This document shows, piece by piece, positions 14,206 to 63,039 of a stretch of DNA of 64,000 nucleotides (position 1 is its first letter; each line of letters starts with the position of its first letter). The position numbers were made by a program, and so were the translations under genes. The DNA lies in the IMG/VR virus record IMGVR_UViG_3300009545_000018, positions 62,001-126,000 of that record, one strand, 5' to 3'. Below the pieces are notes generated by a model. The model saw only the letters and a list, made by a program, of their open reading frames with translations. It did not search any database and was not told where the DNA came from.

Positions 14206-14679
14206 ATGAAGTATTCAAAAGAATTACTATCTAAACTAGTTTCTGAATGTACTACTGTTGCAGAGCTAATGAGAAAGTTAGGACTCCAACAATCTGGAGG
14301 AACACATTCATTTTTAACTAAAAGAATAAAATCATTTAGTATTGACACATCTCATTTTGTTGGTTCTGCTTTTAATGCGGGACTAAATCATGTAGGCGGT
14401 CCAGAGAAACTATGTTCAACAGATGTTTTAGTCCTAGATAGGCTTAACGGTCAAAGAGAGAAATCTTTTAGATTAAAGAGAGCATTATTAGAATCTAACA
14501 TAAAAGAAGAGTGTGAACAATGTGGTGTGAGTACTATTTGGAATAATAAACCAATTACACTTCATATTGATCATAGAGATGGTAATGGTCTAAATAATTG
14601 TATAGAAAATTTAAGGTTCCTTTGTCCTAATTGTCATTCTCAAACGGACAATTATGGATCTAAAAATATTGGAAAATAA
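14206..14679 (+). CDS. HNH homing endonuclease
   Basis: CEQC...LHIDHRDG...N..ENLRFLCPNCH. Confidence 0.9.
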   Translation: MKYSKELLSKLVSECTTVAELMRKLGLQQSGGTHSFLTKRIKSFSIDTSHFVGSAFNAGLNHVGGPEKLCSTDVLVLDRLNGQREKSFRLKRALLESNIKEECEQCGVSTIWNNKPITLHIDHRDGNGLNNCIENLRFLCPNCHSQTDNYGSKNIGK

Positions 14680-16298
14680 TGTCAGAAGAATCCCTTATAG
14701 AAACCCGTCGCCAGAAGCATATTAAAGCTAATGGTGGAACTTACCCCATTGCTAATGATAGTAATTCAATTGATGATATCATTGGGCATAATTTAATTAT
14801 GCGGTTTAAACAACCAGAATCTGACATTAAAACAACTATCTGCTTCTCTGATTTAGAAGGAGAAGAACTCGTTAAGGTTCATGGCAGACTAACCAGTATC
14901 AGAAATACTGGCGGCATTACTTTTCTTAAAATTAAAGATAATACTGGTGCAATACAAATAATTGTTTCAAAAAAAGAATTATCTAATTATAAAGATTTAG
15001 CTAATTTAGATTTAGGCGACATTGTTGAAGTCGAAGGTAAAGTGGTTTTTTCTAAGACCAAAGAATTATCGGTTCTTATGTCTAGCTGGATCTTATTGTC
15101 TAAAGCTATTAGACCTTTACCAGAAAAATATCATGGCATTACAGATGTAGAATTAAAATATCGCAAGAGATATCTAGATTTAATTTGTTCGGATGAGTCA
15201 AGAGAGATCTTTAAATTAAGGTCACTTGTTATTTCTTCCATAAGAAATTTTTTAATTCAGGACGGTTTTATGGAAGTAGAGACTCCAACATTAAATATAG
15301 TTAATAGTGGGGCTAATGCCAAACCATTCCAGACACACCACAATTCTTTAGATATGGATCTTAATTTGAGAATTGCTCCGGAGCTTAATCTCAAGCGATT
15401 AATTGTGGGAGGATTTGATAAAGTATTTGAAATTGGTAAGAATTTTCGTAATGAAGGGCTGTCTACTAGACATAATCCAGAATTTACTATGCTTGAATTT
15501 TATGAGGCTTATAGTAATTTTGGTAATTTAATAGATAAAACAATGCGGCTTTTCAATTATATTGAGGGTGATTTAGAAACTTACTATCAAAGTAAACCAG
15601 AAGAAAAAGTATTATTTGATAAATGGAAAACTGCTCGCCCCTTTTCTTTTTCCTTTTGGAAAGAATTACCTATGTGGGATTTAGTACTTCATGCTTGTAA
15701 TAAAGCAGAAATATTAATTCATCACGGAATTCATCCTCTAGTAAAAGACAGCCCAACAGATGGTGCTCCTTTATTAGAAAGAATTAATTTAAATAATGAA
15801 AGATTATTAAAAATTGATTGGAAAGATTTGTTAGACAAATTAAATCTGGAAAAAGATAATGGTCAAATAATAGGATTATTATTTGAATATCTTGCTGAAC
15901 CATTTCTTACTGAAGATTATAGAACTGCTGATGGTACACATTCTTTGCCAGTCATTGTAACGCAATTCCCCACAGAGCTTTGTCCTTTAGCCAGAGCTTA
16001 TGATAAAGCCCCAACATTATGTGAGCGTTTTGAGCTTTACATAGATGGCAAAGAAATTGCTAATGCCTTTCAAGAACTTAATGATCCAGTAGAACAAAGA
16101 AAAAGGTTTGATGAACAGCTAGTAAGCAATCAAAGAGATGCTATGGATATCGACAATGATTACATTGAAGCTTTAGAATATGGCATGCCTCCAACTGTTG
16201 GTTTGGGTCTAGGAATAGATCGTTTGGTAATGTTATTAACTAATTCATCATCCATTAAAGATGTAATTTTATTTCCTACAATGAAGCCATTAAAGTAA
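14679..16298 (+). CDS. lysS: class II lysyl-tRNA synthetase
   Basis: OB fold, YRKRYLDLI, LRIAPEL.LKRL, FRNEGLSTRHNPEFT, GMPPTVGLGLGIDRL. Confidence 0.95.
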   Translation: MSEESLIETRRQKHIKANGGTYPIANDSNSIDDIIGHNLIMRFKQPESDIKTTICFSDLEGEELVKVHGRLTSIRNTGGITFLKIKDNTGAIQIIVSKKELSNYKDLANLDLGDIVEVEGKVVFSKTKELSVLMSSWILLSKAIRPLPEKYHGITDVELKYRKRYLDLICSDESREIFKLRSLVISSIRNFLIQDGFMEVETPTLNIVNSGANAKPFQTHHNSLDMDLNLRIAPELNLKRLIVGGFDKVFEIGKNFRNEGLSTRHNPEFTMLEFYEAYSNFGNLIDKTMRLFNYIEGDLETYYQSKPEEKVLFDKWKTARPFSFSFWKELPMWDLVLHACNKAEILIHHGIHPLVKDSPTDGAPLLERINLNNERLLKIDWKDLLDKLNLEKDNGQIIGLLFEYLAEPFLTEDYRTADGTHSLPVIVTQFPTELCPLARAYDKAPTLCERFELYIDGKEIANAFQELNDPVEQRKRFDEQLVSNQRDAMDIDNDYIEALEYGMPPTVGLGLGIDRLVMLLTNSSSIKDVILFPTMKPLK

Positions 16299-37823: not shown

Positions 37824-39404
37824 TTGATTATGGTATCTAAAAATTTATTTAAGTCTACAGGTTCAGTTAAGAAAGCAATTAAACCAGTTAATGCTGTTAA
37901 TAATGCGGGCGGTGTGGCTTATACTATGGATGATAAGGCTGCCTTAGCGCAACTTGCCATGACTGGTTGTTTTAATGGAACTTATTATGTTGATGCTAAA
38001 GATCAACTTAATCAAGTTGTTGCTCTTGCTAATAAGCTTCCAGTAGAGTTCGTGGCAAAGTTAGCAGTATATGCTCGCCAAGAAGGTTTTATGAAGGATA
38101 TGCCTGCAGTATTAGCCGCAGTTGTTGCTAGCAAAGATACTGTTCTTTTATCCAAGATCTTTCCAAAGGTTATTGATAATCCAAAAATGGTTCGTAACTT
38201 TGTACAAGTTATTCGTTCTGGAGTAACAGGCAGAAAAAGTTTGGGAACCCGTCCTAAGAAATTAATTCAAAATTATTTGAATTCATTAACTGATGAGCAG
38301 TTGTTTAAGGCTGATGTAGGTAATAGCCCTTCATTACAAGATATTATTAAGTTAGCTCGTCCTAAGCCAGCTACTAAGAATCGCTCTGCTTTGTATGGTT
38401 ATTTGCTAGACAAGGAATATAATCCAGAAGACTTATGTTCCTTGGTTCAAGAGTTTGAATCTTTCAAAAAAGAAATGAGTTTGGATATTCCAAATGTTCC
38501 ATTTCAAATGTTAACAGCTTTGCCATTAACTGATAAGCATTGGAGCAAGATTGCTGAAAATGCAACCTGGAATCAAACCAGAATGAATTTAAATACTTTT
38601 GCTCGTCATAAGGTATTTGAAGATGCTACTACTTTAAACCTATTGGCTGAGAGATTAGCTGATTCTTCACAAATTGCAAAAGCAAAGGTATTCCCATATC
38701 AATTGTTTGCTGCATTTAAAAATGTAACTGCAGATGTTCCTAAGAAATTAACTAATGCTTTACAAAAAGCAGCGGATGCTTCGCTGGAAAATATTCCAGC
38801 TATTGAAGGTGAAGTTCACGTTTTAGTTGATGTATCAGGCAGCATGAGTAGCCCAGTCACTGGTAATCGTGGTTTTGTCACTAGTACTATGCGTTGTATT
38901 GATGTAGCAGCCTTAATGGCTTCTGCATTAATGCGCAAGAATGAAGATACTAAGGTATATCCATTTGATACTAGAGTTCATAATCATTCATTGAATCCAA
39001 TGGATTCAGTGATGACTAATGCGGCAACTCTTGCTGCATTTGGTGGTGGAGGAACTGATTGTGGTATGGCGTTAGAGAATTTAAATAAGCAGAAAGCCAA
39101 AGGCAATCTTGTTATTTATGTTTCTGATAATGAGTCTTGGGTAGATACTACTCCTAATTCCTATTATTCTCAAAGAGGTACTAAGGTAATGGAAGAGTGG
39201 AATAAATATAAAGCTCGTAATCCAAAAGCCAAATTGGTTTGTATTGATGTCACTCCTAATAAAACCACTCAAGCTCATAATAGAGAAGATATAATCAACA
39301 TTGCAGGATTTTCTGATCAAGTATTCGATGTTATTGCATTATTCCAAAAATTTGGCAATAATAAAGATCTTTGGGTTCAAACCATTGACTCAGTAGAAAT
39401 GTAA
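37824..39404 (+). CDS. rsr: Ro60 / TROVE-domain RNA-binding protein
   Basis: NNAGGVAY, LAQLAMTG.FNGTYY, YARQEGFMKDMP, MNLNTFARH, vWA DVSGSM, GGGGTDC, SDNESW. Confidence 0.93.
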   Translation: MIMVSKNLFKSTGSVKKAIKPVNAVNNAGGVAYTMDDKAALAQLAMTGCFNGTYYVDAKDQLNQVVALANKLPVEFVAKLAVYARQEGFMKDMPAVLAAVVASKDTVLLSKIFPKVIDNPKMVRNFVQVIRSGVTGRKSLGTRPKKLIQNYLNSLTDEQLFKADVGNSPSLQDIIKLARPKPATKNRSALYGYLLDKEYNPEDLCSLVQEFESFKKEMSLDIPNVPFQMLTALPLTDKHWSKIAENATWNQTRMNLNTFARHKVFEDATTLNLLAERLADSSQIAKAKVFPYQLFAAFKNVTADVPKKLTNALQKAADASLENIPAIEGEVHVLVDVSGSMSSPVTGNRGFVTSTMRCIDVAALMASALMRKNEDTKVYPFDTRVHNHSLNPMDSVMTNAATLAAFGGGGTDCGMALENLNKQKAKGNLVIYVSDNESWVDTTPNSYYSQRGTKVMEEWNKYKARNPKAKLVCIDVTPNKTTQAHNREDIINIAGFSDQVFDVIALFQKFGNNKDLWVQTIDSVEM

Positions 39405-39737: not shown

Positions 39738-40061
39738 ATGAAAACCATGTTGTTTGAAAAAACTATTAATTTAGTTAAAACTTTAAGAGAAACATTCACA
39801 ACTCGATGTTTACATAATCAAAAATTGCCCCTTTTTAGTTGGTTACATAGAAATTCTAGTAACTTTTCGAATGAAGAGTTTGAAGAGTTTTGGAAATTTT
39901 TAGTAATTTTATTTAAATATAAATATAAGGATATGAGCTTATTTTATGAAGCAGGAGAGTCTCCATTAGAAATGTTTGATTTTAGAGCAAACAAAGATCA
40001 AATCAATGACTTTATTTCTTTATTAGAAAATAAAATTAATAAATTGAAAGCTTTTATTTAA
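39738..40061 (+). CDS. small KAF-tag protein
   Basis: ends KLKAFI. Confidence 0.65.
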   Translation: MKTMLFEKTINLVKTLRETFTTRCLHNQKLPLFSWLHRNSSNFSNEEFEEFWKFLVILFKYKYKDMSLFYEAGESPLEMFDFRANKDQINDFISLLENKINKLKAFI

Positions 40062-40897
40062 TGATTAAAAGAAATGGTATTGAAATTAAGACTGCCCAAG
40101 CTCCAAATATAGTAGCAGCAAAAGATACTTTAAATATTCTTAAGAATAAAAATTATCTTGTTAAAGATAAGATCATAGATATTTCAGTGGCATTAGATAA
40201 TTCAATTAAAAATACTAAGTTATATTTGCCAGAAGATTGTTTTAATAGTAAAAATAATTTAATTAAACCTACTATAGAGGTAACAAATGAAACTACTACC
40301 TCTGCTGGGTTAAGATTATTAAATAGTGGTTTAGAAAATATTGTAGCTTTGAATTTTGCCTCAGCTAGAAATGTTGGGGGCGGATTTTTAGCGGGGGCAG
40401 TTGCCCAAGAAGAAGATTTGTGTCGGTGTTCTGGATTATATCTTTGTATTAAAAGCAAACCTATCTTTTATAATAAAAACATTTTATGTGATGATACTTT
40501 CTATACTAATCATATTATTTACTCACCCAATGTTCCTTTCTTTCGTAATGATAATCTAGATCTTTTAGAAGAGATATTCCACATTTCTATTATTTCTGCG
40601 CCCGCACCTAATGTTAGAGCTATGGAGAATGTTGATGAAGATAATTTAAGAAGCATATTAGAAATAAGGGCAGCTAGAATTTTACAGATTGCTATTGAAA
40701 ATAATCATGAAAATATTATCTTAGGAGCTTGGGGCTGTGGTGCTTTTGGTAATGATTCTAAAATGATAATTGAGGTTTTTCAAAAGGTATTAAATAGATA
40801 TCCTCATTTCAAACATGTTTGTTTTGCCGTCTTTGATAATAAAATAAATGCCCCTATTTTCAATGCATTTAAAGAAGCATTTGAAAATAATGAATGA
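40061..40897 (+). CDS. TIGR02452 / bacterial PARG-like ADP-ribose glycohydrolase
   Basis: LNFASARNVGGGF..GAVAQEEDLCRCS, LGAWGCGAFGND. Confidence 0.9.
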   Translation: MIKRNGIEIKTAQAPNIVAAKDTLNILKNKNYLVKDKIIDISVALDNSIKNTKLYLPEDCFNSKNNLIKPTIEVTNETTTSAGLRLLNSGLENIVALNFASARNVGGGFLAGAVAQEEDLCRCSGLYLCIKSKPIFYNKNILCDDTFYTNHIIYSPNVPFFRNDNLDLLEEIFHISIISAPAPNVRAMENVDEDNLRSILEIRAARILQIAIENNHENIILGAWGCGAFGNDSKMIIEVFQKVLNRYPHFKHVCFAVFDNKINAPIFNAFKEAFENNE

Positions 40898-43867: not shown

Positions 43868-44160
43868 TTGATATTGAAGATATGGTTGAGCAATTGTATC
43901 AAGCTTCTTTAGATCAAACAAATGTTTCTAAAGAAAAAATGCGTTTAATATTAAATTTAGCATTACAAAAGCAATGTAATAATAATTTAGATATTATTTA
44001 TAAATATCTAAATCAATGGAGCGCAACTAAAGTATTAGGCTCTGAAGATAATGATCCGACCTCAAGATTAATTAAATTATTGTTCAGTTTAATCACTGAT
44101 GATATTAATGATGAAGTTAAAGAATATGGAAAGCTATCTGTTAATTATAATATAAAATAA
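43864..44160 (+). CDS. hypothetical protein
   Basis: ORF track. Confidence 0.5.
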   Translation: MIDIEDMVEQLYQASLDQTNVSKEKMRLILNLALQKQCNNNLDIIYKYLNQWSATKVLGSEDNDPTSRLIKLLFSLITDDINDEVKEYGKLSVNYNIK

Positions 44161-44167
44161 TATTGCG

Positions 44168-45170
44168 ATGGATCAAAAAGATTTAATAATACAAGAATTA
44201 CATAATATCATTTATAAATATGGCGTCAAAGCTTTAATGGAATTTGAGTCTAGGTTTCCGTGTGATCAATTAAGTTGTGTTAAAGTTCCATATAATCATA
44301 TTCCTAACAATTCAAAATTCATAGAGAGAAATTTTGGATATGGAATTTTTGTTTGGCAAGGAATTTCTTATAATGATGCATATTTATTTAGAATTCAATC
44401 ATATGAGAAATTTTGGATCGATTGGAATCAATTTAAACGTTATCTAGAATTATTAGCATTTACATGAAGACTAAAAAAGATATTGCAGATTTACTTCGAC
44501 CTATGCTTGAAAAATATGGAAGAGAATATCTTGTTAATTTTAACTTATTGATTAATAACGTTACTTGGGACGGCACTCTTAGTGAGTATGTTTCTATTCC
44601 TTTTAATAACATAAGTGAACACAGAGTTAATTGTAGTTCTTTTTTAGAGCTTAAACAACATATTAATAATTTAGAGATGAAAAGAACTTGGGGAAATTCG
44701 TGGACATATATTGAAGTTCCATCTGATTGTAATGATTTTTTTCATCTTAGAATTGATGGTGTTGAAAATTTTTACATTAAGTGGGAAAAATATCAAAGAT
44801 ACTTAAATTTGAAAGCTTTTATATAATGACAACAGAAGAAGATTTTAGAAAAAGTTTATCTTGTATTATTGAAAAATTTGGTCCAGAACATTTTAGTGTT
44901 ATTTTAACAATTGCACAAAATTCAAGCTTTTATTTTAAAAGTAAAAATATGTTATTAATACCATTTAAATCTAATTCTTCGTTTAAAAGAGTAAATGTTA
45001 AATATGAGGAGTGTGCCGCTGTTGTATGGAAAAATTATGCTAATCATAAATATTTTCCATTTCCTCCAGATTGTGATGATTGGTATTGTATGCTTGGTGA
45101 TTCTTTTGAAAGTATACTAACTCTGTATAATGTTGGTAGCAAAATGATAAAAATGAAAGCTTTTATATAA
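44168..45170 (+). CDS. array of three KAF-tag proteins (44168-44467, 44464-44826, 44826-45170)
   Basis: ends ELLAFT, NLKAFI, KMKAFI; mutually similar N-termini. Confidence 0.7.
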
Positions 45171-45664
45171 TGACAATTGGAATATTTGCTGGCAGTTTTG
45201 ATCCTATTACTTTAGGGCATTTAGATATTATAAATCGTAGTTTAACTTTTTTAGATAAATTAATAGTGTTAATAGCAGTTAACCCAAATAAGAAAACCAC
45301 TTTCTCTTTAAATAAAAGAAAATCTTTAATTATAGAGAGTCTTTTCGAAACATCAACGAGATCTGCAGATGTTATAGTGGATTCATATGATGGATTGGTT
45401 GTTAATTATGCTAAGTTACATGGAGCTTCAGTTTTGATTAGAGGTGTTCGTACCTCAACAGATTTTGAATATGAAACTAATTTAGCTAATGGTAATAGAT
45501 TATTAGCACCAGAGATTGAAACTGTCTTTATACCAACTCGTCCAGAATTATCTGTAGTATCTTCTTCCATGGCTAAAGAAATTAATAAATGGAATGGTGA
45601 TGTATCTAAATTAGTTACAGTTAAAGTTAAAAATGCTCTGAATGAAATTGTGAGTTTAAAATGA
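45170..45664 (+). CDS. coaD: phosphopantetheine adenylyltransferase
   Basis: AGSFDPITLGHLDII, IRGVR..DFEYE, VSSSMAKE. Confidence 0.93.
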   Translation: MTIGIFAGSFDPITLGHLDIINRSLTFLDKLIVLIAVNPNKKTTFSLNKRKSLIIESLFETSTRSADVIVDSYDGLVVNYAKLHGASVLIRGVRTSTDFEYETNLANGNRLLAPEIETVFIPTRPELSVVSSSMAKEINKWNGDVSKLVTVKVKNALNEIVSLK

Positions 45665-46212: not shown

Positions 46213-46302
46213 GGGGAAGTAGCTCAGCCGGCCAGAGCGCTTTACTGTTTTATAAAACGAATAGTGAAGAGGTCGATGGTTCAAATCCATCCTTCCCCAC
46301 CA
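46213..46302 (+). tRNA. tRNA with 20-nt anticodon loop, identity uncertain
   Basis: GGGGAAG/CTTCCCC+ACCA, canonical D and T arms; anticodon arm extended to about 11 bp. Confidence 0.75.
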
Positions 46303-46374
46303 TGAATCAAATGCAGATAAGATTACATTTAACAGTTAATTAAAAAAGCATCTTATCAATAATTTGTTGATTCA
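46303..46374 (+). ncRNA. scaffold-family ncRNA copy A
   Basis: TGAATCAA/TTGATTCA, GATAAGAT/ATCTTATC, ATGC and TACATT motifs. Confidence 0.7.
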
Positions 46375-48484: not shown

Positions 48485-48552
48485 CTGGATGGTGGTTACC
48501 AAATCCGCAAAGGGGTATAGAAATATACTCGGAGGATTGAATCCACTATTAT

Positions 48553-48687
48553 GCAATTCTGGTATAATGGCATTACTGACTCTAAAAAGAGTATCACTTA
48601 CAAAGAAACCTGTGAGGCTACCAGGAAATTATTGTAAGAATAACGCCTTGCCTGGCGTAGATGTTGGTTCGATTCCAACGGATTGCA
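48553..48687 (+). ncRNA. tRNA-like RNA with multi-hairpin central insertion
   Basis: GCAATTC/GGATTGC, D arm, GTTGG-TTCGATT-CCAAC; about 80 nt of hairpins replace anticodon/variable arm. Confidence 0.6.
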
Positions 48688-48691
48688 TTAA

Positions 48692-48782
48692 GTGATGTTT
48701 GATAAGTAATCACGCCAGAAACATGATTTATCATGTTTGCCCTGATCAGCCTGGTAGTTAGGTGCAAATCCTAAGCATCACA
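48692..48782 (+). ncRNA. tRNA-like RNA with branched anticodon arm
   Basis: GTGATGT/GCATCAC, TTAGG-TGCAAAT-CCTAA, AAACATGA/TCATGTTT hairpin inside CCAG/CTGG. Confidence 0.55.
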
Positions 48783-48798
48783 ACAACTGAGTTTATAT

Positions 48799-49079
48799 GC
48801 CCGAATCCCTATATTGGTTAAGACATATAGACAATAGTCCGGTCTTAGGCTACCATTAAGGAGTAATCCTTTTAGAGACCACTGCTTCGGTGTGGGCAAA
48901 CCCGGCATTTAGGTGGAAAGCCTAATAAATTTTGCTTGATTAAATAGTTTCTTGCTACAAGATCAACGGTGTACAACGAATCTTGCTATTTAATTGGGAA
49001 GTCTTATAATTGTGGACTTGGTGAAACAGGTATAAGGCGAATTACGCTCGATATTGGATAAAACTAACATTGGGCGCCA
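48799..49079 (+). ncRNA. 281-nt structured RNA ending in GCCA
   Basis: GCCCGA/TTGGGC terminal stem plus GCCA; GTAA, cTTCGg, GCAA tetraloops. Confidence 0.55.
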
Positions 49080-49143
49080 TGAATCAAATCCGTATAGGAA
49101 TACATTCGGAAAAAATAAATCTTATACACTACTTGTTGATTCA
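49080..49143 (+). ncRNA. scaffold-family ncRNA copy B
   Basis: TGAATCAA/TTGATTCA, GTATAGGA/TCTTATAC, TACATT. Confidence 0.7.
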
Positions 49144-49225: not shown

Positions 49226-49337
49226 TGTAACAAATGCCAGGGCAGCATTACATTTATTGGAATTAAATCCGATGAGGCTCGACTCCTCTTAAGGTCCGGT
49301 GACAGGCAAAACATGTTGCTCATTATTTGTTGTTACA
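49226..49337 (+). ncRNA. scaffold-family ncRNA copy C
   Basis: TGTAACAA/TTGTTACA, GGCAGCAT/ATGTTGCT, TACATT; cargo includes GAGG-CTCGACT-CCTC. Confidence 0.7.
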
Positions 49338-50132: not shown

Positions 50133-50226
50133 TAGCAAATGCAGTAAGGATTACATTGGTTATAGTCAATCGAAAGATTGATGGTGGGTATCGATTCCCA
50201 CAGTATCTTTACAAAACTTGTTGCTA
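50133..50226 (+). ncRNA. scaffold-family ncRNA copy D
   Basis: TAGCAA/TTGCTA, GTAAGGAT/ATCTTTAC, TACATT; cargo GNRA hairpin plus GTGGG-TATCGATT-CCCAC. Confidence 0.7.
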
Positions 50227-50230
50227 TTAT

Positions 50231-50367
50231 TCCGAGGTACGTCTAATGGTAAGACACGCGGCTGTGGGAACTATAGGTTAATAATAAGTCCCGTTCGATT
50301 CGGGCAGTTCCAAGAATAACCGCGCGGTGGTAACACTTTGTAGGTTCGAGTCCTACCCTCGGAGCCA
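50231..50367 (+). tRNA. tRNA-Asn(GTT)-like gene with 51-nt insertion in the anticodon
   Basis: TCCGAGG/CCTCGGA+GCCA; CGCGG-CTGT[50266-50316]TAA-CCGCG. Confidence 0.75.
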
Positions 50368-50557: not shown

Positions 50558-51330
50558 ATGATTTCAAAATTAACAATCAAATCTTATGGAGTGACAGTAA
50601 CTCTTCCCAGTGAAATTCTAATTTTAGAAGATTGTATCTGGGCTAAAACTGGTGAACATTTAGCTTTAGGAAAAGACAAAAATATTATGGGTAATGATTG
50701 TTTTATTGTCCTTAGAAAAAACGGAGTTGTTATTTCTGGACCTTCTCCTTTAATTCATTCGGTTGGAGCAAATAGTTTAATTTATCAAGAGTGTTCGGTA
50801 GAAAAATATTATAAAATGAAAGCATTTTTGTAATGATCAAATATGTTGATGATAACGGTAAAGAAAAAATTTTACCTGAAAAAATAGTTATACTAAAATG
50901 TCCTGATAGTTGGCTTATTGAGCCTGGAGATTATATAGAATTTATTCATACATATTATCTTCATATGAGGATCTCCAGCTTTGAAATCAAAGTTTTAAAA
51001 GGATATCATAAGAATAAAATATTTGATTTACTCTTTAGTCATTTATCTAAGATTGAATATGTAAGCATAGAAAAGTTTGAAAAACTAAAGGCGTTTGTTT
51101 AAATGGAAACCAAGTGGATTTTAGTAACACAACAAAACTCTGTTTACTATAATAAAATCTTAGAATTAAAAGAAGGTTGGACATCAACCATTTATAATGG
51201 GACTATTGTTTGGTTTATTGAGTCAGTAAATGGTCAAGTTAGACATTATCCGGATTGGTTTGAGTTAAACGATTTGCCAACACATACAGTAGTAACAAAG
51301 GATGCCCTTAATTTATTAGCCTTTTTATAA
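50558..51330 (+). CDS. array of three KAF-tag proteins (50558-50833, 50833-51102, 51103-51330)
   Basis: ends KMKAFL, KLKAFV, NLLAFL. Confidence 0.7.
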
Positions 51331-51336
51331 AAAACT

Positions 51337-51579
51337 TTAGATGAATGCCGCAATGGAATACATATACAACCGATAGCTGAATGTCGCAAGACATTCAATA
51401 TCTCCGATTTCATAAAAGAGATATGAACCAACCTAAAGGAATTCCTATAAGGATAAACTATGTGACTGACAAACTTGAAGCCAGTTAAAGCTCAAGTCCT
51501 CTATGGTATTATTAGGATAAGATATACTGTGCTATTGGATAAAATTAATCGCACTTTCTATTGCATTCTTGTCATCTAA
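51337..51579 (+). ncRNA. scaffold-family ncRNA copy G (large cargo)
   Basis: TTAGATGA/TCATCTAA, ATGCC, GCAATGGAA/TTCTATTGC, TACAT, CTTG. Confidence 0.62.
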
Positions 51580-51591
51580 TTAACTTTTCAT

Positions 51592-51720
51592 TTAAATGAA
51601 TGCCGATTCGGGAATACATTAAACACAAAGATACTGCAGCATGTGCCAGGCTAATCCACATGTACCTTAGGAGTACTCAGGGTAAAGTGTACCGACTTCT
51701 CAATCACCTTTGTCATTTAA
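51592..51720 (+). ncRNA. scaffold-family ncRNA copy H
   Basis: TTAAATGA/TCATTTAA, ATGCC, GATTCGGGAA/TTCTCAATC (imperfect), TACATT, TTTG. Confidence 0.62.
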
Positions 51721-51721
51721 C

Positions 51722-52962
51722 ATGAATTACTTAAAACACACATTAGATAACGGCACAGTATTAGAAATACCAGAAGAATTTATGGTATTAGATAATTTAC
51801 CATCAGAAGATCTACATTACAAAGTAGAATTAATTCTTGATTTTATTAGAGGCTGGGTATTTAAAATAACCCATATAAATGGTTTAGAACTAACTCAATA
51901 TAAAGAAGATCCAACATGGATTTGTTATTTTAGTCCAGAAAAGATTTTTAATAAAAAAATTATACCATGTTCACTTGAAAAATTTAACAATATGAAAGCA
52001 TTTTTATAATGTCAAAAGAAGAAAAACCATTATCACCTTATGAGATAAGAAGATTAGGTCATTGCAAAGAAACAGAGCAGTGTGTTGATGATCTATATTG
52101 TAATTGTCCTTGTTTACCTTGTTCTAAGCAAGATTGTTTTAGACCAGGATGTAAATGTGGTAGAACTCATCCATATAAAAATTAATGTACTTACATATCC
52201 ATGATAAAGATGTTCCATCTTCTATTTTAGTTTTAGAAGACTCAAAAACTCACACCATTGAAAAGAATTCTCATTTTGTTTTTAGAAAAATTAAGTATAA
52301 TGAATATTGTGTTGATTTTTTTAATGGTAAAGATAATCGTTATTCTTATGCAAGATATTCAGAAGATGATTTATATCGTATGTTTTTTGATGGCAAATTA
52401 AAATATAAAGAATTTTCTTTAGCCCAGTTTAATAAAATAAAAGCATTTTTATGAAATATTATATTATTGAGGATACAGTAGTTCCAAGTGAGTTCATTAT
52501 AATTCATGATACAGATTTATGTAGAATTTATAATATTTATCCAGAGTTTAATAGAAATATTTATACTCATAAGAATTTTTTTGATTATATAAGCTACGAT
52601 CTTGATTATAATTTTATTTCGATTGCTACCATGCCAGGCAGTCAATTACTAAGTTATATTGATAATAATAAGTTATTTCCAATAGAAAAGTTTAATAGTT
52701 TAAAGGCTTTCTTATGAAATATATTCAAACTGCTAAATATAATTATCCAGAAGAAATATTTGTAACACAAAGTTTCTTTAGACACGAGTGGACTAATAAA
52801 CACTTGGTATTAAAACAATATAATGAATATGTATTAAGTGTATTTTTAATAAATGGGGAAGAGCCCTCACATCCAATGGCTATTACCAATAATTTCATTC
52901 ATGAGGCTAATTTTTTAGAAATGTCTTTAGAAAGATATTTAAAGATTAAATCTTTCTTATAA
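51722..52962 (+). CDS. four KAF-tag proteins (51722-52009, 52185-52454, 52451-52717, 52714-52962) and a Cys-rich 58-aa ORF (52009-52185)
   Basis: ends NMKAFL, KIKAFL, SLKAFL, KIKSFL; overlapping start/stops. Confidence 0.7.
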
Positions 52963-53782: not shown

Positions 53783-53859
53783 AGTCATCTAGTTTAATGG
53801 TAAAACGCCATCACATTTATGTGCCGGCGGAGATCTGGGTTCGAGTCCCAGGATGATTT
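53783..53859 (+). tRNA. degenerate tRNA with expanded anticodon loop
   Basis: AGTCATC/GATGATT, canonical D and T arms, 13-nt loop, no CCA. Confidence 0.55.
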
Positions 53860-53862
53860 CTA

Positions 53863-54013
53863 TGAAAACAAATGCCCGTACAAGGATTACATTCATTATA
53901 GGAACGTGAAGAAAGTTCGATTCTTTCCGCAGCGACCAAACTAAAAACAATTGCTGCGTGGTGTATTGGTTAACACACGAAAAAAACATCTTTGTCAATT
54001 TTTGTTGTTTTCA
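53863..54013 (+). ncRNA. Y RNA-like ncRNA: scaffold copy F with circularly permuted tRNA domain
   Basis: TGAAAACAA/TTGTTTTCA, ACAAGGAT/ATCTTTGT; inside: T arm, CGCAGCG-ACCA, linker, TGCTGCG, D arm. Confidence 0.78.
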
Positions 54014-56290: not shown

Positions 56291-56374
56291 GGGTTCGTCG
56301 CATAGTGGTATTGCACCTGGCTCTTAACCAGACGTAGAAATGCAACGTCGGTTCGATTCCGACCGGACCCACCA
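56291..56374 (+). tRNA. tRNA-Lys(CTT) with long variable arm
   Basis: CT-CTT-AA, 14-nt variable region, ACCA. Confidence 0.88.
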
Positions 56375-61940: not shown

Positions 61941-62477
61941 ATGTCTTATGAGGATAATTTTATAGTTTATGGACCATATTTATCTAAGGATACTGGACGT
62001 AAAATAGTTATTGTAAAATCTAAAAAAGATGGTACAAAAAGAACGATGACTTATCCACGATGGTTACTTGAAGTTCATATGGAAAAACCATTAGATTCTG
62101 ATTTAACTGTGGATCATTGGGACTCAAATCATACTAATGATTCTATTGATAATTTTAAGTTATTTCCAAGATCTGAACATTCATCTAATGATACCAGACG
62201 TGTTAAATTAGTTAAATTCAAATGTAAATGGTGTGACAAAGATTTTGAAAGAAGTCCCCGTCTTATTAGAGATAAATCTAAAAAAGATAAAGCCGGACCC
62301 TTTTGTTCTAGACCTTGTGCTGGCAAATATAGCAGAAAAGTACAGCTCAAATTAATTGATCCAATGGAAGCTCAGCCCATGATAGAAAGCGAATATTATA
62401 AGAAAAAATATGCGTCAGCCATCAATGATATGGTTGATATTTATATTGATTTTTGCTGTGATGTTTGGGAAGAATAA
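61941..62477 (+). CDS. HNH homing endonuclease
   Basis: TVDHWDSNHTNDSIDN, CKWC..FCS..C. Confidence 0.8.
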   Translation: MSYEDNFIVYGPYLSKDTGRKIVIVKSKKDGTKRTMTYPRWLLEVHMEKPLDSDLTVDHWDSNHTNDSIDNFKLFPRSEHSSNDTRRVKLVKFKCKWCDKDFERSPRLIRDKSKKDKAGPFCSRPCAGKYSRKVQLKLIDPMEAQPMIESEYYKKKYASAINDMVDIYIDFCCDVWEE

Positions 62478-62529: not shown

Positions 62530-63039
62530 ATGGAAAAATACAATTATACTATTAGAGATAATTATTTATTATTTTGGCACAGTCACTTTTCAAATTGGTA
62601 TCCAGCAAATTTTATAATTGACATTGCTGATGTGGGTACCATGAGATTTAATTGTGCCGAACAATATATGATGTATATGAAGGCAAAAACTTTTGATGAT
62701 AAATCTATAATGTCCAGTATTATTAATACAAATGATCCAAAAGAACAAAAAAGACTTGGTAGAGACGTTAAAAATTTTAATCCGATAGTTTGGGACAAAC
62801 TAAAAGAACCAGTAGTATATTATGCATGTTTGGCTAAGTATTCGCAGAATGAAGACCTTAAAAAGGACATTCTTGATACTAAAGATTTAATCTTAGTAGA
62901 AGCATCACCTTATGATAAAATTTGGGGAATTGGCATGGCAGAGAGTGATCCTGATGCTACTAATGAAAGTAAGTGGAAGGGTCAAAATTTATTAGGCAAA
63001 GCTTTAATGAAAGTAAGAAATACTTTGAGGTCTAAATGA
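62530..63039 (+). CDS. NADAR (YbiA/DUF1768) family hydrolase
   Basis: FSNWY, AEQYMMYMKA, KRLGR, LVEASPYDKIWGIG, GQNLLGKALM. Confidence 0.93.
   Translation: MEKYNYTIRDNYLLFWHSHFSNWYPANFIIDIADVGTMRFNCAEQYMMYMKAKTFDDKSIMSSIINTNDPKEQKRLGRDVKNFNPIVWDKLKEPVVYYACLAKYSQNEDLKKDILDTKDLILVEASPYDKIWGIGMAESDPDATNESKWKGQNLLGKALMKVRNTLRSK

What the first reader, a model, noticed from the sequence alone, without database searches (positions are those of the whole stretch)
50231..50367. tRNA-Asn with a tRNA-like mini-element inserted in the anticodon
Seen: removing 50266-50316 (51 nt) joins CTGT and TAA into the exact Asn loop CT-GTT-AA, and the T1-A72 pair and G73 match Asn. The insert folds on its own: GGAACT/AGTTCC stem enclosing a T-arm mimic CCCG-TTCGATT-CGGG. 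It is far too short for a group I intron and I see no clear bulge-helix-bulge. Inference: either a new short spliced tRNA intron needing a phage nuclease and ligase, or an unspliced decoy that resists anticodon nucleases.
Basis: partly seen in the sequence, partly recalled or inferred. Interest (0 to 1): 0.8.

Follow-up and report, generated by a model that had tools for sequence, protein, structure and literature searches.

The report
Mini-tRNA insert splitting phage tRNA-Asn
A transfer RNA gene of a 448-kb soil phage is split inside its anticodon by a 51-base miniature tRNA look-alike. The same split site turns up in several unrelated phages, which suggests an undescribed way of cutting such inserts out with the cell's own tRNA-trimming enzymes.

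Summary
Window 50231-50367 is a real tRNA gene (Rfam tRNA 39.3 bits). A 51-nt insert (50266-50316) lies between anticodon positions 35 and 36. Removing it gives the loop CTGTTAA (GTT, Asn), which fits U1-A72 and G73.

The insert is an acceptor-like stem, a 17-nt AT-rich linker and a canonical T arm. This is not chance.

The kind is not new. Lak megaphage tRNAs carry "enigmatic introns" with nested tRNA-like modules (Devoto 2019). I show that the Lak "Tyr" intron really sits in tRNA-Asn at the same CTGT|TAA site, and intron-less orthologues fix its borders. Two more viral lineages (L080 Asn, L168 Asp) hold nested tRNAs at this site. Their ends coincide with the insert borders.

Best explanation: an intervening sequence cut out through its tRNA-like module. 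RNase P would cut at U-1/G+1, which is exactly the 5' border. An RNase Z-type cut would make the 3' border. A ligase would then seal the exons; the phage encodes an Rnl5-type RNA ligase about 67 kb away.

No RNA data and no relatives of this phage exist, so splicing is inferred, not shown. It is a new, minimal variant of a known but unexplained kind.

The parts
50231..50265 (+). 5' exon: acceptor 5' strand (50231-50237), D arm, anticodon stem 5' strand CGCGG (50257-50261), and loop nucleotides C32 U33 G34 U35 (50262-50265)
   Evidence: Rfam tRNA alignment; ARAGORN -i. The 5' flank ...ATTAT| is the same as in other tRNAs of the array.
50266..50316 (+). 51-nt intervening sequence between anticodon positions 35 and 36
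   Evidence: Single copy in the window and in all held loci. No Rfam family matches it on its own.
50266..50272 (+). Inner acceptor-like 5' strand GGGAACT: a G50266/A50312 mismatch plus 6 Watson-Crick pairs. U50265 is at -1 and G50266 at +1.
   Evidence: Minimum-free-energy fold; motif scan.
50273..50289 (+). 17-nt AT-rich linker ATAGGTTAATAATAAGT with a D-loop-like GGTTA; no D arm or anticodon arm
   Evidence: Read from the sequence. The inner module of the Lak Phe intron has the same layout (18-nt linker with GGTTA).
50290..50304 (+). T-arm mimic CCCG-TTCGATT-CGGG; the fifth layer is a U50289/C50305 mismatch
50306..50312 (+). Inner acceptor-like 3' strand AGTTCC plus A50312, directly after the T stem as in a tRNA
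50313..50316 (+). 4-nt single-stranded tail AGAA, in the place of N73 + CCA of the inner module. The insert ends at the equivalent of tRNA position 76.
   Evidence: Inference from the geometry. In L168 the nested tRNA ends in a real TCCA flush with the 3' border.
50317..50367 (+). 3' exon: U36 A37 A38 (50317-50319), anticodon stem 3' strand CCGCG (50320-50324), long variable arm (50325-50339), T arm (50340-50356), acceptor 3' strand (50357-50363), G73 (50364), CCA (50365-50367)
   Evidence: The joined exons fold into a clean cloverleaf with a V arm, -31.5 kcal/mol.
46213..46302 (+). Possibly related: a second tRNA whose anticodon loop reads CTGT + 13 nt (46249-46261, TTTATAAAACGAA) + TAG. The site and the GAA end are the same, but there is no tRNA-like module. 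It has A73 and G1-C72, so its identity is unclear (Asn or Ile).
   Evidence: 11-bp extended anticodon helix, z -4.95.

Best explanation
The 51 nt are an intervening sequence of the 'tRNA nested in a tRNA' kind found in large phages. They split an Asn-type tRNA (GUU; class II-shaped body) between U35 and U36.

What is left of the nested tRNA is its top half only: a 7-layer acceptor-like helix stacked on a 5-layer T arm, plus a 4-nt tail. That top half is the minimal substrate of the tRNA end-processing enzymes.

Proposed mechanism, all inferred:
1. RNase P cuts 5' of G50266, at U-1/G+1 and 12 stacked layers from the T loop. This leaves ...CUGU-3'OH.
2. An RNase Z-type or similar cut at the end of the AGAA tail leaves 5'-P-UAA....
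3. The two exons are held together by the outer acceptor and anticodon stems.
4. An ATP-dependent RNA ligase seals them. This ligase type needs exactly 3'-OH/5'-P ends, and the phage encodes one of Rnl5 type.

The product would be a tRNA reading AAU/AAC.

Shown: the anatomy, the recurrence of the site in other phages, exact borders in the Lak orthologues, and the presence of a ligase gene. Inferred: that the RNA is cut and rejoined, and by which enzymes.
For: 1. The outer gene is intact: Rfam tRNA 39.3 bits despite the insert, encoded CCA, and the same 5' flank as neighbouring tRNAs. The joined exons give a clean cloverleaf.

2. The stems of the insert are GC-rich and its linker is AT-rich in a genome of 30.8% GC, as expected for a maintained RNA structure.

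3. The same site is used in Lak phages. The interrupted Lak-B1 gene has the exons of Lak-A1's uninterrupted tRNA-Asn(GTT), and the reverse holds at a second Asn locus. In both, the only possible split is CTGT|...|TAA. The Lak-A1 and Lak-C1 tRNA-Thr genes differ by an exact 114-nt insert that ends right after the inner discriminator.

4. Independent lineages show the same thing. The L080 tRNA-Asn insert (58 nt) scores 41.9 bits as a tRNA lacking its anticodon arm and spans the insert from first to last base. The L168/L174 tRNA-Asp insert (68 nt) scores 40.5 bits as tRNA from its first base and ends in TCCA flush with the 3' border. In this window, L080 and L168 the 5' border is U|G.

5. The inner T stem covaries between the Lak-A and Lak-B Phe introns.

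6. Ligases are present. This phage has a 366-aa RNA ligase (PF09414 + PHA02142 OB fold, KIHG motif, related to the Naegleria nick-sealing ligase) at contig 44,083-45,183. Lak-A1 has an annotated Rnl2 and a CCA-adding enzyme.

7. There is demand for the tRNA. AAT is the second commonest of the 15 codons tabulated in the window's large ORFs (58.8 per mille, after AAA). No uninterrupted tRNA-Asn lies in the about 96 kb of this genome that I could read.

8. That the acceptor/T-arm minihelix is enough for RNase P, RNase Z and the CCA-adding enzyme is established knowledge, not tested here.
Against: There is no RNA evidence of any kind, and only the interrupted DNA form is seen. No relative of this phage was found, so the insert's conservation is untested.

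The inner helix has two mismatched layers (G/A and U/C). Its tail is AGAA, not CCA, so a cut at 50316|50317 is not a textbook RNase Z site. A cut after N73 would leave a 10-nt loop.

In the Lak introns the nested tRNA starts 27-31 nt after the 5' border, so RNase P cannot define that border there.

Short 13-15-nt hairpin inserts at the same site (window 46249-46261; L152) carry no tRNA-like module. This points to recognition of the outer loop instead.

Rnl5-type ligases are known for nicks in duplexes, not for anticodon loops. A class II-shaped tRNA-Asn is unknown in cells.
Confidence: 0.5

Rival explanations
1. It is a spliced intron, but the cuts are set by a dedicated endonuclease that reads the outer tRNA. 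The enzyme would recognise the loop C-U-G-U of GUN tRNAs, by a ruler or by sequence, and cut after U35. The nested tRNA-like module would be cargo or a selfish passenger.
For: The site after U35 recurs in Asn and Asp tRNAs of four lineages, whatever the insert. Short hairpin inserts without any tRNA-like module sit at the same place (window 46249-46261, L152). The Lak 5' border is not at the inner +1 position.
Against: No candidate endonuclease was found among the window's ORFs that were scanned. The Lak Thr, Gly and Phe introns lie at 36|37, not 35|36. The exact coincidence of the borders with inner positions 1, 73 or 76 in L080, L168 and Lak would be left unexplained.
Confidence: 0.15
2. It is a DNA-level insertion that is never removed from the RNA. 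The gene would be a disabled tRNA, carried along in a tRNA array that is rich in homing endonucleases and tRNA fragments.
For: The array holds several aberrant tRNA-like genes and fragments (46213, 48552-48688, 53783-53860, 53890-53980). HNH, GIY-YIG and LAGLIDADG endonuclease genes lie nearby. The inner module is degenerate: Rfam does not recognise it.
Against: The exons are intact and the insert's stems stay GC-rich in an AT-rich genome. The insert is single-copy with no target-site duplication. It lies at exactly the site where the Lak inserts are exact and mobile between paralogues. No other Asn tRNA was seen in about 96 kb despite heavy AAT use.
Confidence: 0.15
3. It is an unspliced, functional chimeric tRNA mimic. 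Possible roles are a decoy for anticodon- or tRNA-targeting defence nucleases, or a partner RNA for the phage's Ro60 homologue.
For: The window encodes a Ro60/TROVE protein (37824-39404), and bacterial Ro60 binds tRNA-like Y RNAs (own knowledge). Other tRNA-like genes in the array lack a normal anticodon loop. Phage tRNAs are known to evade tRNA-targeting defences (PMC10264068).
Against: No Y RNA or YrlA match in Rfam. The topology differs from YrlA. The intron-less orthologues in Lak show that the uninterrupted form is the functional tRNA. Nothing ties Ro60 to this locus.
Confidence: 0.1
4. It is a processing cassette without rejoining. RNase P and RNase Z would release the mini-tRNA-like RNA, or tRNA halves, as the product, and the outer tRNA would serve only as a scaffold.
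For: The borders match tRNA end-processing sites. In L168 the nested tRNA carries CCA and a 7-nt loop CUUAUAA.
Against: In this window the inner module has no anticodon arm and no CCA, so it cannot decode. The exons are kept intact, and the phage keeps a ligase.
Confidence: 0.08
5. It is an archaeal or eukaryal-type bulge-helix-bulge intron, or a self-splicing or self-cleaving RNA.
For: It lies in the anticodon loop and has a length typical of protein-spliced tRNA introns.
Against: There are no two 3-nt bulges separated by 4 bp in any predicted fold. It is at position 35|36, not 37|38. No group I, ribozyme or other Rfam family matches even at E up to 10. At 51 nt it is far below group I size.
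Confidence: 0.02

Closest known systems
Lak megaphage tRNA 'enigmatic introns' (Devoto et al. 2019, Nat Microbiol, PMC6784885)
   Same: An insert in the anticodon loop of an otherwise intact tRNA of a very large phage. The insert holds a nested tRNA-like module: an acceptor-like stem and a T arm with a TTCGAWT loop. The inner module of the Lak Phe intron (52 nt: stem, 18-nt linker with GGTTA, T arm) has the same layout as this one. The Lak intron annotated as 'Tyr(GTA)' sits at the identical CTGT|TAA site of tRNA-Asn.
   Different: Lak introns are 79-141 nt long. They begin with a WUACAR hairpin and an A-rich linker before the nested tRNA, and they end right after its discriminator C. Here the nested module starts at the 5' border, there is no 5' hairpin, and a 4-nt AGAA tail precedes the 3' border. 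There is no sequence similarity beyond the T loop. The phages are unrelated: Prevotella gut phage with recoded TAG versus a rhizosphere phage.
Nested tRNAs in viral contigs L080 (tRNA-Asn) and L168/L174 (tRNA-Asp), found here
   Same: The same site after U35 and the same U|G 5' border. The nested tRNA-like starts at the first base of the insert.
   Different: Their nested modules still score as tRNA in Rfam (41.9 and 40.5 bits), keep a D arm, and end flush at N73 or at a true CCA. This window's module is reduced to the acceptor/T-arm minihelix, and Rfam does not recognise it.
Archaeal and eukaryal protein-spliced tRNA introns (bulge-helix-bulge; EndA/Sen endonuclease; RtcB or Trl1 ligase)
   Same: A short intron in the anticodon loop, presumably removed by an endonuclease and a ligase.
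   Different: No BHB motif. Position 35|36 instead of 37|38. The ends predicted here are 3'-OH/5'-P, not 2',3'-cyclic-P/5'-OH. The host is bacterial.
tRNA-like processing signals: mitochondrial tRNA punctuation and MALAT1 mascRNA
   Same: A tRNA-like fold inside a longer transcript recruits RNase P and RNase Z, and its ends define the cut sites (own knowledge).
   Different: In those cases the flanks are not rejoined. Here rejoining would amount to splicing.
Phage T4 tRNA repair (PrrC nuclease; Pnkp; Rnl1)
   Same: A phage RNA ligase seals a break in a tRNA anticodon loop.
   Different: There the break is damage done by the host and needs end healing. Here the break would be programmed, with ends that can be ligated directly. 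This phage's ligase is of Rnl5 type.
Bacterial group I introns in tRNA genes (tRNA-Leu UAA, tRNA-fMet and others)
   Same: The only well-established tRNA introns in bacteria; they lie in the anticodon loop.
   Different: They are more than 200 nt long, self-splicing and have a conserved core. Nothing of that is present here.

Membership tests
Phage tRNA intervening sequence with a nested tRNA-like module (Lak type) | The insert lies in the anticodon loop of an otherwise complete phage tRNA gene | tested here: met
   Rfam tRNA 39.3 bits with a 54-nt loop insertion; ARAGORN -i. The contig is a 447,763-bp viral contig.
Phage tRNA intervening sequence with a nested tRNA-like module (Lak type) | The insert contains an acceptor-like helix whose 3' strand directly follows a T arm with a T-loop consensus | tested here: met
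   GGAACT/AGTTCC around CCCG-TTCGATT-CGGG. Unique in the window; present in 9 of 200 shuffles of the whole window.
Phage tRNA intervening sequence with a nested tRNA-like module (Lak type) | An end of the nested module coincides with a border of the insert | tested here: met
   The 5' border is inner position +1 (U-1/G+1), if the G/A layer is counted. The 3' border falls at the equivalent of position 76, which is less certain. Compare L080, L168 and Lak.
Phage tRNA intervening sequence with a nested tRNA-like module (Lak type) | An intron-less allele or orthologue shows that the borders are exact | tested here: inconclusive
   Shown for Lak. For this phage no relative was found in any collection, and the DNA run holds only the interrupted form.
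Phage tRNA intervening sequence with a nested tRNA-like module (Lak type) | The insert is removed at RNA level | not testable with these tools
   No RNA run was listed. It has not been shown for Lak either (PMC6784885).
tRNA-Asn (GUU) | Anticodon GUU, G73, and (as in E. coli) U1-A72 | tested here: met
   U1-A72 and G73 are read directly. GUU arises only after removing 50266-50316. The same split occurs in proven Lak tRNA-Asn genes.
tRNA-Asn (GUU) | Class I body with a 4-5-nt variable loop | tested here: not met
   The variable arm is 15 nt. The 3' half resembles the phage's own tRNA-Tyr. The phage's tRNA-Gln and tRNA-Lys(CTT) also carry long V arms.
Bulge-helix-bulge tRNA intron | Two 3-nt bulges separated by a 4-bp helix at the splice sites; usually position 37|38 | tested here: not met
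   The minimum-free-energy and centroid folds show a 1 x 4 internal loop next to a 3-bp helix. The position is 35|36.
Group I intron or small self-cleaving ribozyme | Match to a conserved catalytic core | tested here: not met
   No Rfam match at E up to 10 on the insert alone or on the 301-nt region.
Y RNA / YrlA (Ro60 partner) | A Ro60-binding stem formed by the 5' and 3' ends, plus a tRNA-like domain without a free CCA | tested here: not met
   No Rfam hit. This RNA has a free acceptor end with CCA. The only link is the Ro60 gene 11 kb away.

The most novel reading that the evidence does not exclude
Large phages carry a class of tRNA introns that are themselves stripped-down tRNAs. They would be excised by the universal tRNA end-processing enzymes, with RNase P making the 5' cut and an RNase Z-type enzyme the 3' cut. 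A phage ATP-dependent RNA ligase would then reseal the exons. That would be a third, so far undescribed route of tRNA splicing and the first protein-dependent one in the bacterial world. It has a preferred homing site after U35 of GUN (queuosine-family) tRNAs. This window would hold its minimal form, showing that only the acceptor/T-arm minihelix is needed.
Probability: 0.3. Interest if true: 0.9.

Novelty: new variant of a known kind. Interest (0 to 1): 0.72.

Why it matters
Bacteria and their viruses are thought to have only self-splicing tRNA introns. The Lak 'enigmatic introns' have stayed unexplained since 2019.

This window supplies the smallest example. The comparisons made here add three concrete handles:
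- a common insertion site, after U35 of Asn and Asp tRNAs, in four unrelated phage lineages;
- borders that coincide with positions 1, 73 or 76 of the nested tRNA;
- a phage ligase that needs exactly the ends RNase P and RNase Z produce.

Together they turn an oddity into a mechanism that can be tested with three purified enzymes and one 137-nt transcript.

If the mechanism is true, tRNA annotation of large phages is systematically wrong for these genes: bacterial-mode tools miss them, and eukaryotic mode misplaces the intron and misnames the tRNA, as with Lak 'Tyr'. It would also mean that phage tRNA supply can be gated by a phage-encoded ligase.

Tried and rejected
**Relatives of this phage.** None was found.
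- blastn of the locus and tblastn of a 551-aa protein against 50,697 phage records gave nothing close.
- Exact-pattern scans of IMG/VR with the insert, the 5' half and the 46213 loop returned only the source contig.
- Protein-seeded locus searches returned only the source contig.
- The metagenome scan with the T-arm/V-arm pattern returned the source contig plus unrelated Tyr-like tRNAs.

**RNA evidence.** No RNA run was listed. The one DNA run holds only the interrupted form.

**The insert as a repeated mobile element.** There is no second copy in the window or in any held locus.

**Known RNA families.** Nothing matches the insert.

**BHB, group I, ribozyme.** Rejected; see the membership table.

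**Tyr, His or Ile readings.** GTA cannot be produced from this loop. GTG, GAT and AAT can be, but they do not fit G73/U1-A72 or the Lak and L080 parallels.

**Bacterial genomes.** The Asn-D-arm + CTGTR pattern hit mainly ordinary tRNA-His genes (Acidobacteria, candidate-phyla bacteria and a few other lineages), plus three tRNA 5' halves followed by unrelated sequence. None had a short tRNA-like insert.

**ARAGORN with forced introns** on the metagenome loci gave mostly artefacts.

**A covariance model of the nested modules** was not built. MAFFT could not align the 5' strands cleanly, and I did not type hand-made alignments.

**Walking the genome downstream** failed for lack of DNA. The upstream walk found the ligase. 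About 350 kb of the genome remains unread.

Full report
**Source.** The window is part of IMGVR_UViG_3300009545_000018, which is the same as Ga0105237_10000004. This is a 447,763-bp viral contig from a rhizosphere metagenome. Window position 1 corresponds to contig position 62,001. GC content is 30.8%. The finding lies in a tRNA array between 46 and 58 kb.

**The observation.** ARAGORN and Rfam miss the gene with default settings. With laxer filters the Rfam tRNA model matches 50231-50364 end to end at 39.3 bits (gathering score 29), with a 54-nt insertion in the anticodon loop and a second insertion in the variable region.

The minimum-free-energy fold keeps the outer cloverleaf. It folds the insert as GGAACU/AGUUCC closing a CCCG-UUCGAUU-CGGG hairpin. 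Folding energies are not significant (z about -1).

The motif is significant. A 6-bp Watson-Crick stem enclosing, within 30 nt, a T-arm hairpin that abuts its 3' strand occurs once in the 64 kb. It occurs in 9 of 200 dinucleotide shuffles of the whole window.

Other splits of the same loop give GTG, GAT or AAT, so the Asn call needs outside support.

The body is class II-shaped, and its 3' half is closest to the phage's own tRNA-Tyr. Long V arms recur in this phage's tRNA-Lys(CTT) and tRNA-Gln, so the arm is a trait of this phage's tRNA set and not a defect.

**Context in the window.** The gene has an encoded CCA and the same ...ATTAT| 5' flank as several neighbouring tRNAs. The insert's stems are GC-rich and its 17-nt linker is AT-rich, as expected for a maintained structure in an AT-rich genome. 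The insert is single-copy, and no Rfam family matches it, including tRNA and the ribozymes.

AAT is the second commonest of the 15 codons tabulated in the large ORFs (58.8 per mille, after AAA). No uninterrupted tRNA-Asn lies in the roughly 96 kb of the genome I could read.

A second tRNA (46213-46302) has the loop CTGT + 13 nt + TAG, which uses the same site. That insert also ends in GAA but has no tRNA-like module.

**Precedent.** Devoto et al. 2019 (PMC6784885) reported 'enigmatic introns' in Lak megaphage tRNAs, one of which 'may encode a tRNA'. Their Table S6 sequences all show a short 5' hairpin, an A-rich linker and a nested tRNA-like module. A later survey repeats the observation without a mechanism (PMC13037316). 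I found no paper that explains them.

**Re-analysis of Lak.** I fetched the tRNA regions of Lak-A1, Lak-C1 and Lak-B1.

- Lak-A1 tRNA-Thr differs from Lak-C1 tRNA-Thr by exactly 114 nt: CTTGT|...C|AA. The 3' border falls right after the discriminator of the nested tRNA.
- The intron annotated in 'tRNA-Tyr(GTA)' is in fact in tRNA-Asn. The exons of the interrupted Lak-B1 gene equal Lak-A1's uninterrupted tRNA-Asn(GTT), and both genes lie between tRNA-Arg and tRNA-Glu.
- The interrupted Lak-A1 gene in turn matches Lak-B1's uninterrupted tRNA-Asn next to tRNA-Val.
- The only split that restores CTGTTAA is CTGT|...|TAA, between positions 35 and 36. That is the site of this window's insert.
- The intron therefore occupies different Asn paralogues in the two Lak lineages. 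Insertion or loss is exact and has happened more than once.
- All four Lak introns end with the inner acceptor strand plus C, directly before the 3' exon.
- The inner T stem covaries between the Lak-A and Lak-B Phe introns.
- The inner module of the Lak Phe intron (52 nt) has the same layout as this window's: stem, 18-nt linker with GGTTA, T arm.

**More lineages.** I scanned IMG/VR for an Asn/Asp-type D arm followed by CTGT and a purine.

- L080 (a 55-kb contig) has a tRNA-Asn with CTGT|58 nt|TAA. The insert alone scores 41.9 bits as a tRNA without an anticodon arm, and the match runs from its first to its last base.
- L168 and L174 (93-kb contigs) have a tRNA-Asp with CTGT|68 nt|CAC. The insert scores 40.5 bits as tRNA from its first base and ends in TCCA flush with the 3' exon.
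- L152 has a tRNA-Asp with a 15-nt hairpin at the same site.
- The same pattern in 185,579 bacterial and archaeal genomes hit mainly ordinary tRNA-His, plus three tRNA 5' halves followed by unrelated sequence. None had a short tRNA-like insert.

So the site after U35 of GUN tRNAs is interrupted in at least four unrelated phage lineages. In this window, L080 and L168 the 5' border is U|G at position +1 of the nested module.

**Mechanism (inferred).** The borders coincide with the natural ends of the nested tRNA: position 1 at the 5' side, and position 73 (L080, Lak) or 76 (L168) at the 3' side.

In this window, counting the G50266/A50312 and U50289/C50305 layers gives a 7 + 5 stack. U50265 is then at -1 and G50266 at +1, which is the preferred context of bacterial RNase P (own knowledge). 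The AGAA tail takes the place of N73-CCA, so the insert corresponds to positions 1-76 of a mini-tRNA.

RNase P and RNase Z leave 3'-OH and 5'-P ends. ATP-dependent RNA ligases seal these without end healing.

This phage encodes such a ligase at contig 44,083-45,183. It has PF09414 at 1.6e-20, a PHA02142 OB fold and a KIHG motif, and its best solved relative is the Naegleria nick-sealing ligase. Lak-A1 has an annotated Rnl2 and a CCA-adding enzyme.

The window's element keeps only the acceptor/T-arm minihelix, which is the minimal substrate of these enzymes. That is what one expects if the module is retained for processing and not for decoding.

**Weak points.**
- There are no RNA data and no relatives of this phage.
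- The tail is not CCA, and a cut after N73 would leave a 10-nt loop.
- In Lak the 5' border is 27-31 nt upstream of the nested tRNA, so another activity is needed there.
- The 13-15-nt inserts at the same site have no tRNA-like part, which favours recognition of the outer loop.
- Rnl5 ligases are known for duplex nicks.
- The tRNA array also contains several aberrant tRNA-like genes and fragments, so a dead gene cannot be excluded.

**Verdict.** The Asn/intron reading is supported by comparison, not by RNA. The element is a new, minimal variant of a reported but unexplained kind. The comparisons made here yield a specific, testable splicing model.

Noticed in passing
window 46213-46302: A tRNA whose anticodon loop is CTGT + TTTATAAAACGAA + TAG. 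It folds into an 11-bp extended anticodon helix (z -4.95). The site and the GAA end match the finding, but there is no tRNA-like module. With A73 and G1-C72 its identity (Asn or Ile) is unclear.
   Followed up: partly
L072:9414-9581 and L074:9358-9576 (Lak-A1, Lak-B1): The Lak intron published as lying in tRNA-Tyr(GTA) lies in tRNA-Asn(GTT) between positions 35 and 36. It occupies different Asn paralogues in the A and B lineages, and each has an intron-less orthologue in the other lineage.
   Followed up: yes
window 48552-48688 and 48689-49080: A tRNA-like gene with an acceptor stem, a D arm, a T arm and three extra hairpins in between (z -2.87). It is followed by about 400 nt of GC-rich, ORF-free sequence ending in ...GGGCGCCA. 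No Rfam match.
   Followed up: partly
window 53783-53860 and 53890-53980: A tRNA whose anticodon arm is closed into a long hairpin. Just downstream lie a T arm + acceptor 3' strand + ACCA, followed 14 nt later by a matching acceptor 5' strand + D arm. This is a permuted-looking arrangement or a pair of tRNA fragments.
   Followed up: no
window 46306-46330, 49088-49112, 49232-49256, 50139-50160, 53871-53895: A recurring motif AAATGC-N(5-10)-GATTACATT after or before tRNA genes. The TTGTTG...TAT motif directly precedes several tRNA 5' ends. These may be promoter or processing signals.
   Followed up: no
window 50133-50226: The leader just upstream of the finding folds into a four-way structure with a T-arm-like hairpin GTGGG-TATCGATT-CCCAC (z -3.17).
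   Followed up: partly
window 14679-16298, 56291-56374; L148:7516-7604: The phage encodes a lysyl-tRNA synthetase (TIGR00499, 4.5e-151). Its tRNA-Lys(CTT) (84 nt) and tRNA-Gln(TTG) (89 nt) have long variable arms, which are not known for these tRNAs in cells.
   Followed up: partly
window 37824-39404: A Ro60/TROVE + vWA homologue (Rsr-like). No Y RNA was found by Rfam in 44-60 kb. Nearby lie a PARG-like protein (40061-40897) and a NADAR protein (62530-63039).
   Followed up: no
window 50558-52962: Seven tandem paralogous ORFs of 75-99 aa ending in ...K(A/S)F(L/V), directly downstream of the tRNA. No family match for the two that were scanned.
   Followed up: no
L004:342-437, L045, L053:3541-3636, L068:3456-3552: Marine phage-like contigs carry a 96-nt class II-shaped tRNA with U1-A72, G73 and loop CTGTTTC (anticodon GTT, U37), next to a normal tRNA-Asn. 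L053 has PHROG hits. No cultured phage has it.
   Followed up: partly
L018, L019, L021, L024-L026, L031, L034, L057, L060 and others: A widespread family of Tyr-like tRNA-shaped RNAs, mostly in lake metagenomes. They start GTAGACGTGAGTGG and end ...ACCA, and many copies have a TTGACA/TATAAT-type promoter. The anticodon arm is replaced by a CCTCC...GGAGG helix with hypervariable inserted hairpins. Rfam sees at most a weak tRNA (31 bits).
   Followed up: no
L176:312-1412 (contig 44,083-45,183) and L176:3562-4221: An Rnl5-type RNA ligase (OB fold + PF09414, KIHG motif) and, 2 kb further on, a metallophosphoesterase that could act in RNA end healing.
   Followed up: partly
L080:4633-4747 and L080:8217-8291: The contig with the clean nested tRNA also has a second oversized tRNA-like gene (115 nt) and a CTA suppressor tRNA, which hints at TAG recoding as in Lak.
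   Followed up: no
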